This document shows positions 4,043 to 11,721 of a stretch of DNA of 64,000 nt, piece after piece. Positions within the stretch are counted from its first letter, which is position 1. Each line of letters opens with the position of its first letter. Under the pieces are notes generated by a model. That model saw nothing but the letters and a program-made list of their open reading frames with translations, was not told the origin of the DNA and did no database searches. The translations under genes were made by a program, and so were the position numbers. The stretch is from positions 62,001 to 126,000 of the IMG/VR virus record IMGVR_UViG_3300036770_007495; one strand, written 5' to 3'.

Positions 4043-4225
4043 ATGAAAACAGCAATTGATTTAAAAGAATATTTGAGTCAAAACTCTTTAACAGATGTAT
4101 TTGAAGAACCTGTCAAAGTTTTAATTCAAATGGAAGACGATACTTATAAACATTGTACAATATGCACAATGGCATATGTTTGGTCTGGTGAAAGTGAAGC
4201 ACAAAAATGCCTTATAATAGGTTGA
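4043..4225 (+). CDS. small hypothetical protein
   Basis: 60-aa ORF between tRNAs. Confidence 0.6.
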   Translation: MKTAIDLKEYLSQNSLTDVFEEPVKVLIQMEDDTYKHCTICTMAYVWSGESEAQKCLIIG

Positions 4226-7463: not shown

Positions 7464-7742
7464 ATGAACAATCGTAGATCATTCTTCAAAAGCCTCATTG
7501 GCTTGATCGTTGCACCAAAGGTTGCTGAAGCTCTACCAACAGAAGCTCCAATACCATCAATTCCTGTATATGCTCCAATGAGGAGATTAAGGGCTAATTG
7601 GTCAATTGAAGTGGAGCAAGATCTTATGCGTATGCATGGCATAGACCTTGATGCAATGCTATTAACAAATATGTCAAAAGCAATTCAGGAAGAAATTGAT
7701 AATGACATGGTAAAAAAATTAACAAAGAAAATGGGGAGTTAG
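7464..7742 (+). CDS. Tat-like signal fused to a major-capsid-protein fragment
   Basis: NRRSFFK; C-terminal half aligns to gp23 of this window. Confidence 0.75.
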   Translation: MNNRRSFFKSLIGLIVAPKVAEALPTEAPIPSIPVYAPMRRLRANWSIEVEQDLMRMHGIDLDAMLLTNMSKAIQEEIDNDMVKKLTKKMGS

Positions 7743-7806
7743 TATAGAAGCAGTACATTGGCTCGACACGCCAAAGAAGAAGGAGCGTTACCTTCACTCC
7801 CTACCA
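7733..7806 (+). tRNA. tRNA-Val(GAC)
   Basis: ttggc-tcGACac-gccaa; ACCA. Confidence 0.8.
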
Positions 7807-7807
7807 T

Positions 7808-7882
7808 GGTTCCTAAGCATAGATAGCGATGCACACGATTGGTATTTGTGATAGAGGAGTGCAAATCTCCTAGGAACCTCCA
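7808..7882 (+). tRNA. tRNA-Thr(GGT)
   Basis: cacga-ttGGTat-ttgtg; TCCA. Confidence 0.8.
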
Positions 7883-7924
7883 CTCATCGCAGACAACACA
7901 TAAAATGCATGTATGTGAAGCAAC

Positions 7925-8011
7925 TAATAAAAAAACAATGTAGTTGCAAATAGCGAAGTTGAGATTAAAATAATGCACAAGAGCAAGATAAAGCTCAATG
8001 ATCTTTGAAAA
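7925..8011 (+). promoter_or_regulatory. rRNA-like promoter plus boxA-like antiterminator
   Basis: A-tract, TTGCAA-16 bp-TAAAAT, TGATCTTTGAAAA at 7999-8011. Confidence 0.55.
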
Positions 8012-8014
8012 ATT

Positions 8015-8420
8015 CCGTGGTGGCAGAACAATGGGTCGCCAGCCCATAATGCACTAAGCAACGTCTGAAAAGACGCCAGGTAGGTTGAAGAAGTTGTGCC
8101 GGATAAAGCTGAAATAGCCAAGGTTGGCTAACCTTGAGTGACGTAAGAAGACAACAAATCGCAATAATCTTGCTGATGGCTGTATTGTCTTGGAGATAAC
8201 CATTCCTCCCTATCATTAACAGTGAGAGTAATTAACTCATTGGATAGTGGCTGAATAATCCGACACAATGGAGGCTTGTGAGTAGTCAGGAATCTCACCC
8301 ACACTAATTTTGGCTAACGAATTCTGTATGCCACCTCCCGTAACCAATGGAAAAATTACAGAATGCGTTTGTGGGAGTCGCAGAAACCTTCAGTAATTTT
8401 CAACAATCTCGCAAGAGGAT
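8015..8420 (+). ncRNA. large ornate ncRNA candidate (GOLLD/ROOL-class)
   Basis: many complementary segments incl. ggtggca/tgccacc, ttgtgccggat/atccgacacaa, cccaca/tgtggg, attctgta/tacagaat; no credible ORF. Confidence 0.6.
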
Positions 8421-8441
8421 AAAAAGGAAACACACATACAC

Positions 8442-8657
8442 ATGAATAAAAACGCATATGAAATTCGCTTGGAAGTTCTTGGAATGGCTCATGGCACCGT
8501 CTGGAGCCTGTACCATGAAAAGCTCAATGCAATGAGAATCAATGCTGATAAAGCAAATCAGTTCTTTGATGAGACATTGGTTGACAAGCTTGCGCCTAGC
8601 GCAAAGGACGTTTTGTCTTATGCTGCTGAACTCTATGAGTTCGTAGAAGGCAAATAA
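8442..8657 (+). CDS. small hypothetical phage protein
   Basis: AAGGA upstream; MNKNAYEIRLEVL..A...LYEFV pattern typical of T4-like phages. Confidence 0.75.
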   Translation: MNKNAYEIRLEVLGMAHGTVWSLYHEKLNAMRINADKANQFFDETLVDKLAPSAKDVLSYAAELYEFVEGK

Positions 8658-8705
8658 AGTCAAAGTGGTGCTGGATAACCACATTAAACACCAGCTATTT
8701 TCAAT

Positions 8706-8801
8706 GCTCCAGTAGCTCAATTGGTAGAGCGGAAGGCTTATACCCTTCGTATGCACCAGATTAGTGCGCGGTTGTCGGTTCGAGCCCGGCCTGGAGTACC
8801 A
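8706..8801 (+). tRNA. tRNA-Ile(TAT) with long variable arm
   Basis: gaagg-ctTATac-ccttc; canonical D and T arms; ACCA. Confidence 0.85.
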
Positions 8802-10464: not shown

Positions 10465-11721
10465 ATGAATCGTAGAGAATTTCTTCGAGTTGGTGCTGCA
10501 GCAGGCATTTCTTTGCCAACAATGTTGCGCAGTCAAGATGCTACCAAAGTCAAAGCAGCATCAGTAATCCAAATCTTCTTGCCTGGTGGCATTGCACATC
10601 AGGATGCATGGGATTACAAACCATATGGATCACCAGAGTATCGTGGTCCATTTGCAGGCATCAAGACCAAAATTGATGGAGTTCACTTTGGTGCATTGTT
10701 GCAAAACACTGCTAAAATCAGCGACAACTTGACTGTGATTCGTTCCATGACACATGGTGAAGCAGCCCACGAACGAGGTGTGCACAACATGTTGACTGGC
10801 TACAGACCTTCACCTGCTTTGACATATCCATCATTTGGAACGGTCATCAATCACGAGTTGGGCGGCAGAAACAACTTGCCTGCATATGTGCTTGTGCCAA
10901 ATCAATTTGCTCCTGAGAATGGCACGGGATATCTATCAACACGTTACGGACCATTTGCAGTGGGGGCAAACCCAGAAGATCCTTCATTCTCCGTAAAGGA
11001 TCTCAAGTCACCTGCAGGAGTAACAGATCAGGCATTTGAACGTCGCAGAGCTCTTCTTGGTGTTGTTGATGACCATTTCAAAACCAGAGAATCACATGTG
11101 GATGCAGTCAAAGCCATGGATTCATTTTATAATGATGCATACAGCATGGTATCATCAACCCAAGCACGAGAAGCATTTGAATTGAGCAAAGAAACTGATG
11201 CAATGCGTGATGCATATGGCAGAAATGCTGCAGGCCAGCGCATGTTGCTGGCTCGCCGATTGGTAGAAGCAGGTGTTCGCATGGTCACTGTCACATATGG
11301 CAGCTGGGATCATCACAGCAATCTCAAAGGTGCGTTTGAGAGCAACATGATGAACTTTGATAAAGCATATGCCATGCTCATTACTGACTTGAAGCAAAGA
11401 GGCTTACTTGATTCTACACTGGTGATGATTACATCAGAATTTGGTCGCACACCAAAGATTAATGGAACCAATGGCCGCGATCACTGGCCTCGTGTGTTTT
11501 CCACTGTGCTTGCTGGGGGTGGAACCAAGGCTGGTTTTGCATATGGAACCAGCGATGCACTTGCTGCGGAACCGGAAACAGATCCTGTTTCGCCTGGTCA
11601 ATTGGCTGCAACCATGTACCATCTCATGGGCATTGATCCAAGAAAGAAGCTCATGACTCCTGATTTAAGACCAGTTGAAATTGTGTATGAAGAAGATCCT
11701 ATTGAAAAGATCTTGGCTTAA
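10465..11721 (+). CDS. DUF1501 protein with Tat signal
   Basis: NRREFL; IFLPGG..HQD.WD.KP; WDHH; SEFGRTPKIN..GRDHWP. Confidence 0.9.
   Translation: MNRREFLRVGAAAGISLPTMLRSQDATKVKAASVIQIFLPGGIAHQDAWDYKPYGSPEYRGPFAGIKTKIDGVHFGALLQNTAKISDNLTVIRSMTHGEAAHERGVHNMLTGYRPSPALTYPSFGTVINHELGGRNNLPAYVLVPNQFAPENGTGYLSTRYGPFAVGANPEDPSFSVKDLKSPAGVTDQAFERRRALLGVVDDHFKTRESHVDAVKAMDSFYNDAYSMVSSTQAREAFELSKETDAMRDAYGRNAAGQRMLLARRLVEAGVRMVTVTYGSWDHHSNLKGAFESNMMNFDKAYAMLITDLKQRGLLDSTLVMITSEFGRTPKINGTNGRDHWPRVFSTVLAGGGTKAGFAYGTSDALAAEPETDPVSPGQLAATMYHLMGIDPRKKLMTPDLRPVEIVYEEDPIEKILA

What the first reader, a model, noticed from the sequence alone, without database searches (positions are those of the whole stretch)
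7925..8420. ~400-nt ornate RNA transcribed like an rRNA operon
Seen: A-tract, -35/-10 with a 16-bp spacer, boxA-like TGATCTTTGAAAA, then an ORF-free stretch with long-range (8019-25/8329-35) and local stems and GNRA loops; ggtggca/tgccacc crosses cccaca/tgtggg and attctgta/tacagaat, implying pseudoknots. Established: GOLLD and ROOL RNAs occur in phage tRNA clusters. May be a short member or a new class; the boxA suggests Nus antitermination.
Basis: partly seen in the sequence, partly recalled or inferred. Interest (0 to 1): 0.7.

Follow-up and report, generated by a model that had tools for sequence, protein, structure and literature searches.

The report
Giant-phage manA-like self-pairing RNA
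A giant phage encodes a 295-base non-coding RNA, a larger cousin of the cage-forming manA RNA, that is abundant in environmental RNA samples, has its own rRNA-style promoter leader, carries two loops built to pair with copies of themselves, and may be circular.

Summary
It spans about window 8011-8305 on the + strand. I found 68 distinct homologs in large phages: Lak megaphages, a 735-kb phage, and freshwater, gut and rumen contigs. They are almost always co-oriented inside tRNA arrays. In 41 divergent sequences, 74 base pairs are 94% canonical and 58 pairs show compensatory changes. A loop-to-internal-loop pseudoknot also covaries. Two hairpin loops hold self-complementary tetramers that change by compensatory substitution of adjacent bases, which only pairing between two copies explains.

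The promoter, a leader hairpin and a boxA-like box are conserved wherever the RNA heads a transcription unit. Eight metatranscriptomes show a discrete RNA confined to about 8011-8309, many-fold above what little flank coverage appears. Two of them join 8305 head-to-tail to 8011/8013, which suggests a circle.

It is not GOLLD or ROOL. The only Rfam resemblance is a recurrent sub-threshold match to manA (RF01745). A 2026 preprint shows that manA RNAs form RNA-only cages through kissing loops.

Verdict: an enlarged, unannotated manA relative that works as a stand-alone, self-associating phage RNA.

The parts
7944..7971 (+). Sigma-70-type promoter: -35 TTGCAA (7944-7949), 16-bp spacer, -10 TAAAAT (7966-7971). 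The inferred transcription start is about 7978.
   Evidence: Consensus scan. Both hexamers keep their positions in 7 close relatives (TTGATA/TTGAAT/TTGCAG and TAAAGT/TATACT/TACATT) while the spacer sequence varies.
7981..7996 (+). Leader hairpin GAGC-AAGAUAAA-GCUC, in the position of an rrn boxB-like hairpin.
   Evidence: In 16 distinct box-bearing lineages, a hairpin of unrelated sequence sits a few bases upstream of the box.
7999..8011 (+). boxA-like box UGAUCUUUGAAAA.
   Evidence: GYUCUUUGAAA-type boxes occur in 21 of 68 loci, almost all without a tRNA directly upstream; in L052 a tRNA ends 58 nt before the RNA. The box is absent from the abundant mature RNA. GTTCTTTGAAAA is the conserved rrn spacer box used as a mycoplasma PCR primer site (papers listed, plus my own knowledge).
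8011..8305 (+). Mature structured RNA, about 295 nt. The ends are ambiguous by up to 4 nt because AATT occurs at both boundaries.
   Evidence: The conserved core appears in 68 distinct homologs. In eight metatranscriptomes the abundant short contigs lie within 8011-8309; the flanks had zero depth in four runs and low depth in three. In X15 a separate 10.9-kb contig also spans the region. Head-to-tail joints 8305->8011 and 8305->8013 fix the ends.
8017..8020 (+). P1 closing helix, 5' strand GUGG. It pairs with CCAC 8299-8302. The consensus extends the helix to 8010-8016 / 8303-8309.
   Evidence: RNAalifold on 41 sequences gives 4-6 pair types per position. Examples: AUUUG/CAAAU in L001, UUUCUUAG/CUAAGAAA in L055.
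8023..8052 (+). P2 (8023-25/8050-52), an internal loop AGAACAA / AUAAU, and hairpin P2a (8031-36/8042-47). This is the module shared with manA.
   Evidence: Covariation. Alignment to the manA model.
8038..8041 (+). Pseudoknot, 5' half: the P2a loop GCCA pairs with UGGC 8177-8180 in the P6 internal loop.
   Evidence: 39-40 of 41 sequences are canonical at each of the 4 pairs, with 2-4 pair types each, e.g. AGCA/UGCU and GACA/UGUC in Lak phages.
8062..8075 (+). P3 hairpin capped by the GNRA tetraloop GAAA (8067-8070).
   Evidence: Stem covariation. The loop is GAAA in most sequences, GCAA in L087/L128, and GAAG in L081/L084/L088.
8101..8111 (+). P4 long-range helix, 5' strand GGAU-AA-AGCUG. It pairs with UGGCU-GAAUA-AUCC 8248-8261. 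This is a second GAAYAA/UAA-type internal loop.
8117..8139 (+). P5 hairpin. The 8-nt loop UUGGCUAA (8124-8131) has a self-complementary core, GGCU (8126-8129).
   Evidence: The core tetramer is GGCC, GGCU, GGUC, GUAC, GCGC or GAUC, and is self-complementary in 41 of 41 representatives. Adjacent bases 8127-8128 covary as Watson-Crick pairs, ranking 20th of all column pairs.
8135..8149 (+). Invariant 15-mer UGAGUGACGUAAGAA, followed by CAAAUCG (8155-8161).
   Evidence: Invariant in the blastn-found homologs. It was then used as the search pattern, so its invariance in later hits is by construction.
8148..8191 (+). P6 helix (8148-54/8185-91) enclosing a variable hairpin and the conserved CUGAUGGCUGUA strand.
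8192..8209 (+). P7 hairpin GGAGA-UAACCAUU-CCUCC.
8210..8247 (+). P8: outer helix 8210-14/8243-47, inner helix 8220-26/8236-42. The loop AGUAAUUAA (8227-8235) has a self-complementary core, AAUU (8230-8233).
   Evidence: The outer helix is canonical in 40-41 of 41 sequences, with 3-4 pair types. The loop core is AAUU, GAUC, CAUG, AGCU, ACGU, CGCG or GGCU, and is self-complementary in 39 of 41. Adjacent bases 8231-8232 rank 13th and 8230-8233 rank 30th in mutual information.
8278..8298 (+). P9 hairpin GUGAG-UAGUCAGGAAU-CUCAC, followed directly by the P1 3' strand. It closely resembles the last hairpin of manA.
8306..8400 (+). A separate conserved element of about 95 nt with its own hairpin (8321-29/8356-64). 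It is not part of the RNA.
   Evidence: It is found in 9 relatives, there placed just upstream of tRNA-Ile(UAU). RNA depth here was zero in four runs and 0-3 in three others; in X15 only the long 10.9-kb contig covers it.

Best explanation
Window 8011-8305 (+) is a gene for a stand-alone, stable RNA of about 295 nt. It is an enlarged, distant relative of the manA RNA motif, and large phages carry it together with their tRNA arrays.

Shown:
- It is conserved in 68 distinct phage loci.
- It folds into a closed, ten-helix structure with one pseudoknot, a GNRA loop and two GAAYAA/UAA-type internal loops.
- It accumulates in nature as a discrete molecule whose ends lie at the base of the closing helix P1.

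Inferred, step 1 (making the RNA):
- In this phage it is made from its own sigma-70 promoter.
- The 5' leader (hairpin plus boxA-like box) recruits the host Nus factors, as in rRNA operons. RNA polymerase can then run through the untranslated RNA, and the tRNA genes beyond it, without Rho termination.
- The leader is then cut off.
- In phages where the RNA sits flush between two tRNAs, ordinary tRNA processing (RNase P and a 3' endonuclease) would release it instead.

Inferred, step 2 (what the RNA does):
- The two exposed self-complementary loops, L5 and L8, each pair with the same loop of another copy.
- That gives a symmetric dimer or a larger RNA-only assembly.
- This parallels the kissing-loop cages that cryo-EM shows for manA RNAs.

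What the particle does for the phage is unknown. My best guess is a trans-acting scaffold or container linked to the phage's tRNA and translation takeover, not a cis-acting switch.
For: Conservation and context:
- blastn finds the RNA in a 735-kb phage and 15 Lak megaphages.
- Pattern scans give 29 viral loci and 73 genuine metagenome loci (74 pattern hits, one a false positive).
- Within 5 kb there are 394 same-strand tRNAs and 0 opposite-strand tRNAs. In 15-18 loci the RNA lies flush between tRNAs.
- There is a single copy in the complete 224.7-kb genome.
- Only 6 MAG contigs among 185,579 prokaryote species carry it.

Structure:
- 65 RNAalifold pairs, 49 of them with compensatory changes.
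- 74 pairs are 94.0% canonical, against 38-44% when the partner column is slid. 58 pairs show double changes, more than any shuffle.
- The pseudoknot and the P8 outer helix covary.

Self-pairing loops.

Promoter, hairpin and box. The box occurs almost only where no tRNA lies directly upstream; in L052 a tRNA ends 58 nt before the RNA.

Expression:
- Short contigs at depth 23-759 cover only 8013-8309, with flanks at 0-11 apart from X15's long contig.
- Four more runs, from four studies, cover only 8011-8305, with flanks at 0.

manA link:
- A sub-threshold RF01745 match lies on the RNA in the window (18.5 bits), in Lak phages and in 14 of 20 further loci (16.5-26.3 bits).
- A bona fide manA RNA in cyanophage S-CREM1 lies flush between tRNA-Leu and tRNA-Asn.
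- Downstream of the window's RNA are a cytidylyltransferase-like gene and a cupin with weak mannose-6-P isomerase similarity, the classic manA neighbours (PMC2864571).
- manA RNAs form 8-, 10- and 60-mers through kissing loops and a GNRA-receptor contact (bioRxiv 10.64898/2026.07.01.735769).
Against: - No function is shown.
- The manA relationship rests on about 20-bit matches, far below the 55.2-bit cut-off. The homologs are not independent of each other. A sequence-only profile recovers only the GUGACUGAAUAA motif in true manA loci. The central domain differs.
- True manA cages use heterotypic loop contacts, not palindromic loops, so the assembly geometry cannot be transferred.
- No oligomer was modelled or measured.
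- The boxA reading rests on sequence resemblance and position only. The host is unknown, so its own rrn boxA could not be compared.
- The RNA evidence comes from assembled contigs of relatives (about 90-97% identical), not raw reads of this phage. Contig ends are not RNA ends.
Confidence: 0.7

Rival explanations
1. It is a cis-acting riboswitch or 5' UTR element, which is how Rfam types manA. On this reading it senses a metabolite and controls the downstream small ORF, tRNA-Ile(UAU), the cytidylyltransferase-like gene and the cupin gene.
For: - manA was proposed as a riboswitch candidate upstream of mannose/fructose and nucleotide-metabolism genes (PMC2864571).
- In P-SSM2, manA lies between regA and a purL-like gene.
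- Genes of those same kinds lie 0.5-1 kb downstream in the window.
- No + strand terminator is predicted between the RNA and those genes.
Against: - Downstream neighbours vary widely. Often a tRNA follows within 5-20 nt, and a tRNA often precedes the RNA too.
- No conserved expression platform follows P1.
- The RNA accumulates 25- to 70-fold above the downstream region, with a sharp 3' edge at the end of P1.
- Two self-pairing loops have no role in a cis switch.
- manA itself forms cages in vitro.
Confidence: 0.1
2. It is a covalently closed circular RNA. After excision, the 5' and 3' ends held together by P1 are ligated, by the phage Rnl1/Rnl2-type ligases or by a host ligase. This reading extends the best explanation rather than excluding it.
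For: - Two metatranscriptomes from different studies contain contigs that join 8305 directly to 8011 (X23) or 8013 (X25).
- The X23 contig is 326 nt, which equals 295 + 31. That is the signature of a closed cycle in a k=31 assembly graph. Its mean depth is only 5.7, so the junction cannot be a rare by-product.
- No DNA locus shows a tandem copy.
- The junction 20-mer is absent from 2.9 million viral DNA contigs.
- The genome encodes Rnl1-type (PF09511, 76 bits) and Rnl2-type (PF09414, 57 bits) RNA ligases. LR756501 and Lak-B4 also carry ligase-family genes.
Against: - Only 2 of 8 RNA runs show the joint.
- In X24 the contig runs into a sequencing adapter at 8301, which suggests a preferred linear end.
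- In X15 the abundant contig has 30 unrelated letters before 8013.
- Reverse-transcriptase template switching at exact RNA ends could give the same joint. The AATT shared by both boundaries would favour that.
- No DNA run from the same samples could be checked.
- The ligase genes are common in T4-like phages and so are not specific evidence.
Confidence: 0.4
3. It is a short member of the GOLLD or ROOL families.
For: - It shares their genomic habit. GOLLD and ROOL often lie in tRNA arrays of phages and prophages (review PMC12990946).
- Those RNAs also form multimers.
Against: No match to the GOLLD or ROOL models at gathering score, nor at E <= 10 with permissive filters on the 871-nt region, nor in 24 homologous loci. 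The size is 295 nt, against roughly 580-800 nt.
Confidence: 0.02
4. It is merely a structured spacer or processing signal of the tRNA operon, for example stems recognised by RNase III or RNase E, with no function of its own.
For: - It is co-oriented with tRNAs and often flush against them.
- The extended P1 helix formed by the flanking sequences resembles rRNA processing stems.
Against: - A spacer would not keep about 300 nt of ten covarying helices, a pseudoknot, invariant 15-mers and two palindromic loops from gut Lak phages to freshwater T4-like phages that are only 50-60% identical.
- It would not carry its own promoter.
- It would not outlast its neighbours in RNA pools.
Confidence: 0.05

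Closest known systems
manA RNA motif (Rfam RF01745; Weinberg et al. 2010, PMC2864571; cryo-EM preprint 10.64898/2026.07.01.735769)
   Same: - Both are phage-borne.
- Both have a 5' GUGRC-NGAAYAA / UAA internal-loop hairpin module.
- Both end in a hairpin with a GUA..CAG.AAUC loop, followed at once by the 3' strand of a helix that pairs with the 5' end.
- A bona fide manA can sit flush between tRNAs (S-CREM1).
- The same kinds of downstream genes occur nearby.
- Both carry conserved exposed loops and a GNRA loop of the sort manA uses for intermolecular contacts.
   Different: - It scores 16-26 bits against a 55.2-bit cut-off.
- It is about 295 nt, against about 190.
- The central domain is replaced by a larger P4-P8 domain with a second GAAYAA module and a loop-internal-loop pseudoknot.
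- The contact loops are self-complementary (homotypic). The manA contacts reported are heterotypic (L5-L7', L8-L9').
- It is found in megaphages of gut Bacteroidota and in freshwater jumbo phages rather than in marine cyanophages.
- It has its own promoter and a boxA-like leader.
- It may be circular.
ROOL and GOLLD RNAs
   Same: Large, ornate RNAs of unknown function in phage and prophage tRNA arrays that self-assemble into RNA-only multimers.
   Different: No similarity at the sequence or covariance-model level. This RNA is two to three times smaller.
rRNA-operon antitermination leader (boxB hairpin, boxA, Nus factors)
   Same: The order is the same: promoter, hairpin, boxA-like GYUCUUUGAAA, then a structured untranslated RNA. 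The flanks pair into a long stem, and the leader is removed from the mature product.
   Different: It is encoded by a phage and leads a 295-nt RNA plus tRNAs, not rRNA. No boxC was identified. Binding of NusB/NusE is untested. The box is absent where the RNA is embedded directly after a tRNA.
Stable RNAs 'species 1 and 2' (rnaC, rnaD) of the phage T4 tRNA cluster (from my own knowledge, not tested here)
   Same: Small stable RNAs of unknown function, co-transcribed and processed with phage tRNAs in a T4-like phage.
   Different: The T4 RNAs are about 120-140 nt. No relationship was tested.
Palindromic kissing-loop dimerisation sites, e.g. HIV-1 DIS and HYER1 domain 3 (review PMC12990946; the DIS example is from my own knowledge)
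   Same: A hairpin loop whose core palindrome differs between lineages (GCGCGC vs GUGCAC in HIV-1; GGCC, GUAC, GCGC and GAUC here) yet always stays self-complementary.
   Different: Here there are two such loops per molecule, in a phage non-coding RNA.

Membership tests
manA RNA (RF01745) | Score at or above the Rfam gathering threshold (55.2 bits) | tested here: not met
   18.5 bits in the window. 18-20 bits in Lak phages. 16.5-26.3 bits in 14 of 20 further loci and no hit in the other 6. True manA in S-CREM1 scores 96.6 bits.
manA RNA (RF01745) | 5' module: GUGaC-UGAAUAA strand, hairpin, UAAgG strand | tested here: met
   Window 8019-8052 aligns to model positions about 18-60. nhmmer of the family profile hits exactly this motif in the P-SSM2 and S-CREM1 manA loci, though weakly (E 0.039 and 0.68).
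manA RNA (RF01745) | Terminal hairpin with the GGUA..A.uAAUCC loop, followed by the 3' strand of the long-range helix to the 5' end | tested here: met
   Window UUGUGAGUAGUCAGGAAUCUCAC-CCAC compared with S-CREM1 UUGUGAGUAUGACAGAAUCUCAC-CAUCC. The long-range helix covaries.
manA RNA (RF01745) | Central domain: multistem junction with three hairpins, plus one further hairpin | tested here: not met
   cmscan needs a 134-nt insertion and deletes that hairpin. The family's own consensus has P3 and a P4-P8 domain instead.
manA RNA (RF01745) | Homo-oligomeric assembly (pentamer-based 10- or 60-mers) in vitro | not testable with these tools
   Known for manA from cryo-EM. Here there is only indirect evidence, two self-complementary loops.
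GOLLD / ROOL | Match to the Rfam covariance models | tested here: not met
   No match at gathering score over the 64-kb window or at E <= 10 over 7850-8720.
Group I intron / tmRNA / RNase P RNA | Match to the Rfam models; tmRNA also by ARAGORN | tested here: not met
rrn-type boxA antitermination leader | boxA-like sequence between the promoter and the structured RNA, preceded by a hairpin | tested here: met
   UGAUCUUUGAAAA at 7999-8011 follows the hairpin at 7981-7996 and the promoter. The same layout occurs in 16 lineages with unrelated hairpins. The box appears almost only in loci with no tRNA directly upstream; in L052 a tRNA ends 58 nt before the RNA.
rrn-type boxA antitermination leader | Binding of NusB-NusE and resistance to Rho termination | not testable with these tools
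   The host is unknown, and this needs a biochemical assay.
Riboswitch | Expression platform (terminator or RBS-sequestering helix) coupled to the aptamer, and a constant class of downstream genes | tested here: not met
   No + strand terminator. The downstream neighbour is a tRNA, an ORF or another element, depending on the lineage.
Circular RNA | Head-to-tail junction present in RNA and absent from DNA | tested here: inconclusive
   The junction appears in 2 of 8 RNA runs. It is absent from about 100 homologous DNA loci and from the viral-contig collection. DNA from the same samples was not examined, and template switching is not excluded.

The most novel reading that the evidence does not exclude
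The RNA is a covalently closed circle of about 295 nt, made from a DNA phage gene. It is excised at the base of P1 and sealed by the phage's own Rnl1/Rnl2-type RNA ligases. The circles then assemble, through two homotypic kissing loops, into an RNA-only particle in infected cells. That would be the first circular, self-assembling non-coding RNA of a bacteriophage. It would also give T4-type RNA ligases a substrate beyond tRNA repair.
Probability: 0.35. Interest if true: 0.92.

Novelty: new variant of a known kind. Interest (0 to 1): 0.78.

Why it matters
- A July 2026 preprint showed that manA RNAs build capsid-like RNA cages in vitro, yet manA is still catalogued as a cis-regulatory motif of unknown role.
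- This locus shows that a larger, unannotated branch of that lineage is widespread in the largest known phages, including Lak megaphages of human and animal guts.
- Here the RNA is an independent gene with rRNA-style transcription signals, and it is among the most abundant phage RNAs in environmental transcriptomes.
- Its contact loops evolve by compensatory change. That is natural-history evidence that self-assembly is under selection in vivo and is not an in vitro curiosity.
- It links manA-type RNAs with ROOL and GOLLD as a general class of self-assembling RNA particles that ride with phage tRNA arrays.
- It gives concrete loop mutations to test.
- The head-to-tail junctions raise the possibility of a circular phage RNA.

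Tried and rejected
- Rfam at gathering score found only tRNAs.
- Single-sequence folding was not significant, z = -1.43.
That element on its own also folds no better than shuffles, z = -0.96.
- A pseudoknot between UAGCC (8115-8119) and the P5 loop, as the manA model alignment implied, is rejected. It fails in lineages with GUAC loops.
- Syn9 was searched for manA as a comparison and had none.
- A sequence-only profile against true manA loci gave only a motif-level hit.
- A loose boxA regular expression over the genome was not specific, with 20 hits.
- Literature searches for a prior description of this RNA in Lak or huge phages, or of circular phage non-coding RNAs, found nothing relevant.
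- A crude regex parse of the loop cores misregistered some loops, so I rely on the alignment-based counts.
- A covariance model of the whole RNA was not built, because about 320 positions exceeds the calibration limit.
- The count of structure pairs was not used. The equivalent counts and controls were computed.
Full report
**Observation**

The window's first 9.7 kb is a phage tRNA array with 23 tRNAs, all on the + strand.
- an A-rich tract;
- TTGCAA, 16 bp, TAAAAT at 7944-7971;
- TGATCTTTGAAAA at 7999-8011;
- a stretch with no + strand ORF of 25 aa or more;
- a GAAA tetraloop at 8067-8070.

On its own the region is unconvincing. Promoter-like sites are no more frequent than in shuffled sequence. 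The minimum-energy fold is not better than shuffles, z = -1.43. No Rfam family reaches its threshold.

**It is a conserved gene**

A sensitive blastn search found the central 200 nt, about 71% identical, in a 735-kb uncultured phage and in 15 Lak megaphages of Prevotella. All of these records are unannotated. In Lak phages the element fills the gap between tRNA-Thr and tRNA-Met.

An invariant 15-mer (window 8135-8149) and a longer pattern retrieved 29 true loci from viral contigs and 73 genuine loci from metagenome contigs, from 74 pattern hits of which one (L092) was a false positive. That makes 68 distinct sequences and 41 representatives below 93% identity. Most are only 50-60% identical to the window.

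The contigs include human-gut, rumen-type and freshwater assemblies, and many exceed 200 kb. Of 185,579 prokaryote species genomes, only 6 MAG contigs carry it, mostly Bacteroidales and probably binned phage DNA.

The window's own genome is a complete 224.7-kb phage with terminal repeats and a single copy of the RNA.

Context is striking. Within 5 kb of the RNA there are 394 same-strand tRNAs and no opposite-strand tRNA. In 15-18 loci the RNA is flush between two tRNAs.

**Structure**

RNAalifold on the 41 representatives gives 65 pairs, 49 of them with compensatory double changes. I added two elements found by covariation, which brings the total to 74 pairs.
- 94.0% of the cells are canonical, against 38-44% when the 3' partner is slid by 1-3 columns.
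- 58 pairs carry double changes, more than any of 300 column shuffles.

The fold has these parts:
- closing helix P1 (8017-20/8299-8302, extended by the flanks);
- P2/P2a with an AGAACAA/AUAAU internal loop;
- P3 capped by GNRA;
- long-range P4 with a second GAAUA/AA loop;
- hairpins P5, P7 and P9;
- P6;
- a two-tier P8.

The P2a loop GCCA (8038-41) pairs with UGGC (8177-80) in 39-40 of 41 sequences, with 2-4 pair types per position. This is a genuine pseudoknot.

Their 3' partners lie in 8306-8400, a separate conserved element of about 95 nt. In L026-type relatives that element sits just before tRNA-Ile(UAU), and at this position it is missing in L022.

**Two self-pairing loops**

The P5 loop core is GGCC, GGCU, GGUC, GUAC, GCGC or GAUC. 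The P8 loop core is AAUU, GAUC, CAUG, AGCU, ACGU, CGCG or GGCU. The cores are self-complementary in 41 of 41 and 39 of 41 representatives respectively.

I ranked all column pairs by mutual information, without reference to any structure. The adjacent bases 8231-8232 rank 13th and 8127-8128 rank 20th, and both are 100% canonical. Neighbouring bases cannot pair within one molecule. This covariation therefore points to pairing between two copies of the same loop.

Palindromic loop pairing is a known way of forming RNA homodimers (review PMC12990946).

**Transcription unit**

In the seven closest relatives, the -35 and -10 hexamers keep their positions while the spacer sequence changes. Downstream of the inferred start come a hairpin and the box.

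Across 16 distinct box-bearing lineages the hairpin sequence is unrelated, but the order (hairpin, a few A-rich bases, GYUCUUUGAAA, P1) is kept. The box occurs in 21 of 68 loci, almost all without a tRNA directly upstream; the exception is L052, where a tRNA ends 58 nt before the RNA. That is the behaviour expected of a transcription-unit leader, not of part of the fold.

The order matches the boxB-boxA leader of rRNA operons. GTTCTTTGAAAA is the conserved rrn spacer box of Mollicutes and Firmicutes (my own knowledge; it appears as a mycoplasma primer site in papers listed). Nus-factor antitermination is therefore a reasonable inference, but it is untested.

**Expression**

Twenty named metatranscriptome runs (about 13 studies) hold part of the stretch. 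In four of them, short contigs of 230-270 nt at depth 23-759 cover only 8013-8309. Apart from one 10.9-kb contig in X15 (depth 152) that also spans the tRNAs and the RNA region, the flanks are at 0-11.

In four others, from four different studies, coverage is confined to 8011-8305 and the flanks are at zero. So a discrete, abundant RNA exists. It lacks the leader, and it ends where P1 ends.

Two runs contain head-to-tail joints.
- X23: a 326-nt contig reads 8133-8305 and then, directly, 8011-8127. Its length is 295 + 31, a closed cycle for k = 31. Its depth is only 5.7.
- X25: a contig reads 8197-8305 and then 8013-8089.

Several facts bear on this.
- No DNA locus has a tandem copy.
- The junction is absent from the viral DNA collection.
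- The phage encodes Rnl1- and Rnl2-type RNA ligases.
- Against a circle, X24 shows an adapter at 8301, and template switching cannot be excluded.

I rate a true circle at about 35-40%.

**What it is related to**

There is no match to GOLLD, ROOL, group I introns, tmRNA or RNase P RNA, even at E <= 10.

Of 4,227 families, only manA recurs on the RNA, on the right strand and at the right place. It scores 18.5 bits in the window, 18-20 bits in Lak phages, and 16.5-26.3 bits in 14 of 20 further loci. The match covers two parts:
- the 5' GUGRC-GAAYAA hairpin module;
- the last hairpin plus the closing helix.

The centre differs, and a sequence-only profile recovers just the GUGACUGAAUAA motif in true manA loci.

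Context agrees with a relationship.
- The bona fide manA RNA of cyanophage S-CREM1 (96.6 bits) lies flush between tRNA-Leu and tRNA-Asn.
- The window has a cytidylyltransferase-like gene and a cupin with weak mannose-6-P isomerase similarity downstream. These are the neighbours that gave manA its name.

A July 2026 preprint reports cryo-EM structures of manA RNAs as 8-, 10- and 60-subunit RNA-only cages. They are held together by intermolecular kissing loops and a GNRA-receptor contact.

I therefore file this RNA as a distant, enlarged relative that probably works like manA, by self-assembly. It is not a member by the family's own threshold.

**Mechanism and rivals**

The best-supported reading is a stand-alone RNA. 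It is made from its own promoter with an rrn-like leader, or released by tRNA processing where it is embedded between tRNAs. It is trimmed to P1, and it self-associates through L5:L5' and L8:L8' contacts.

A cis-acting riboswitch is unlikely, for three reasons:
- the downstream neighbours vary, and tRNAs often flank the RNA on both sides;
- there is no expression platform;
- the RNA far outnumbers its downstream region in RNA pools.

A mere processing spacer cannot explain 300 nt of covarying architecture shared by gut and freshwater phages.

The biological role of the particle remains unknown.

Noticed in passing
window 8306-8400: A conserved element of about 95 nt with a 9-bp hairpin (AUUCUGUAU/AUACAGAAU) and an invariant CGUUUGUAGGAGUCG..GAAACCUUCAGU tail. 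In nine relatives it lies immediately upstream of tRNA-Ile(UAU). Here a 71-aa ORF (8442-8657) separates the two. Its RNA abundance is low.
   Followed up: partly
window 8706-8801: tRNA-Ile(UAU) is unusually long at 96 nt (93-96 nt in relatives). It is the constant downstream partner of the RNA in this clade. It may carry an insertion or an intron.
   Followed up: no
window 7464-7742: A 92-aa ORF inside the tRNA array matches only positions 141-195 of the T4 gp23 major capsid protein family (PF07068, E = 1e-14). It looks like a capsid-gene fragment.
   Followed up: no
window 7733-7803 and 7808-7879: Two tRNA-like sequences are called by Rfam (46 and 43 bits) but not by ARAGORN. They lie just upstream of the RNA's promoter.
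   Followed up: no
window 10465-11721: The phage carries a full-length DUF1501 gene (371 bits) with a twin-arginine-like signal peptide. This family is typical of Planctomycetota/Verrucomicrobiota-type bacteria and may hint at the host.
   Followed up: no
L096 2080-2203, L097 2620-2696, L074 148-269: Sub-threshold matches to YrlA (Y RNA-like; up to 45.7 bits, E = 5e-7, cut-off 69) occur in the tRNA arrays of related megaphage contigs.
   Followed up: no
L058, L074, L077, L087, L089, L099, L103, L116, L119: Many carrier contigs encode a CUA-anticodon suppressor tRNA, which ARAGORN calls tRNA-Pyl, near the RNA. This is consistent with phages that reassign the TAG stop codon.
   Followed up: no
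window 8283-8293 (P9 loop): Within the loop, positions 8285 and 8289 covary as G/G, A/U or U/A (32, 4 and 3 sequences). C8173 covaries with G8289 (83% canonical). These hint at a structured loop and a further tertiary contact.
   Followed up: partly
window about 4072-4094: A second boxA-like sequence, AACTCTTTAACAG, lies between tRNA-Gln and tRNA-Glu in the same array. The regular expression used was not specific.
   Followed up: no
L072 4746-5568 (cyanophage S-CREM1): In S-CREM1, the wcaG, manA and abiF RNAs are all interleaved with tRNA genes in one array. This suggests that several so-called cis-regulatory phage motifs may be tRNA-array-borne stand-alone RNAs.
   Followed up: partly
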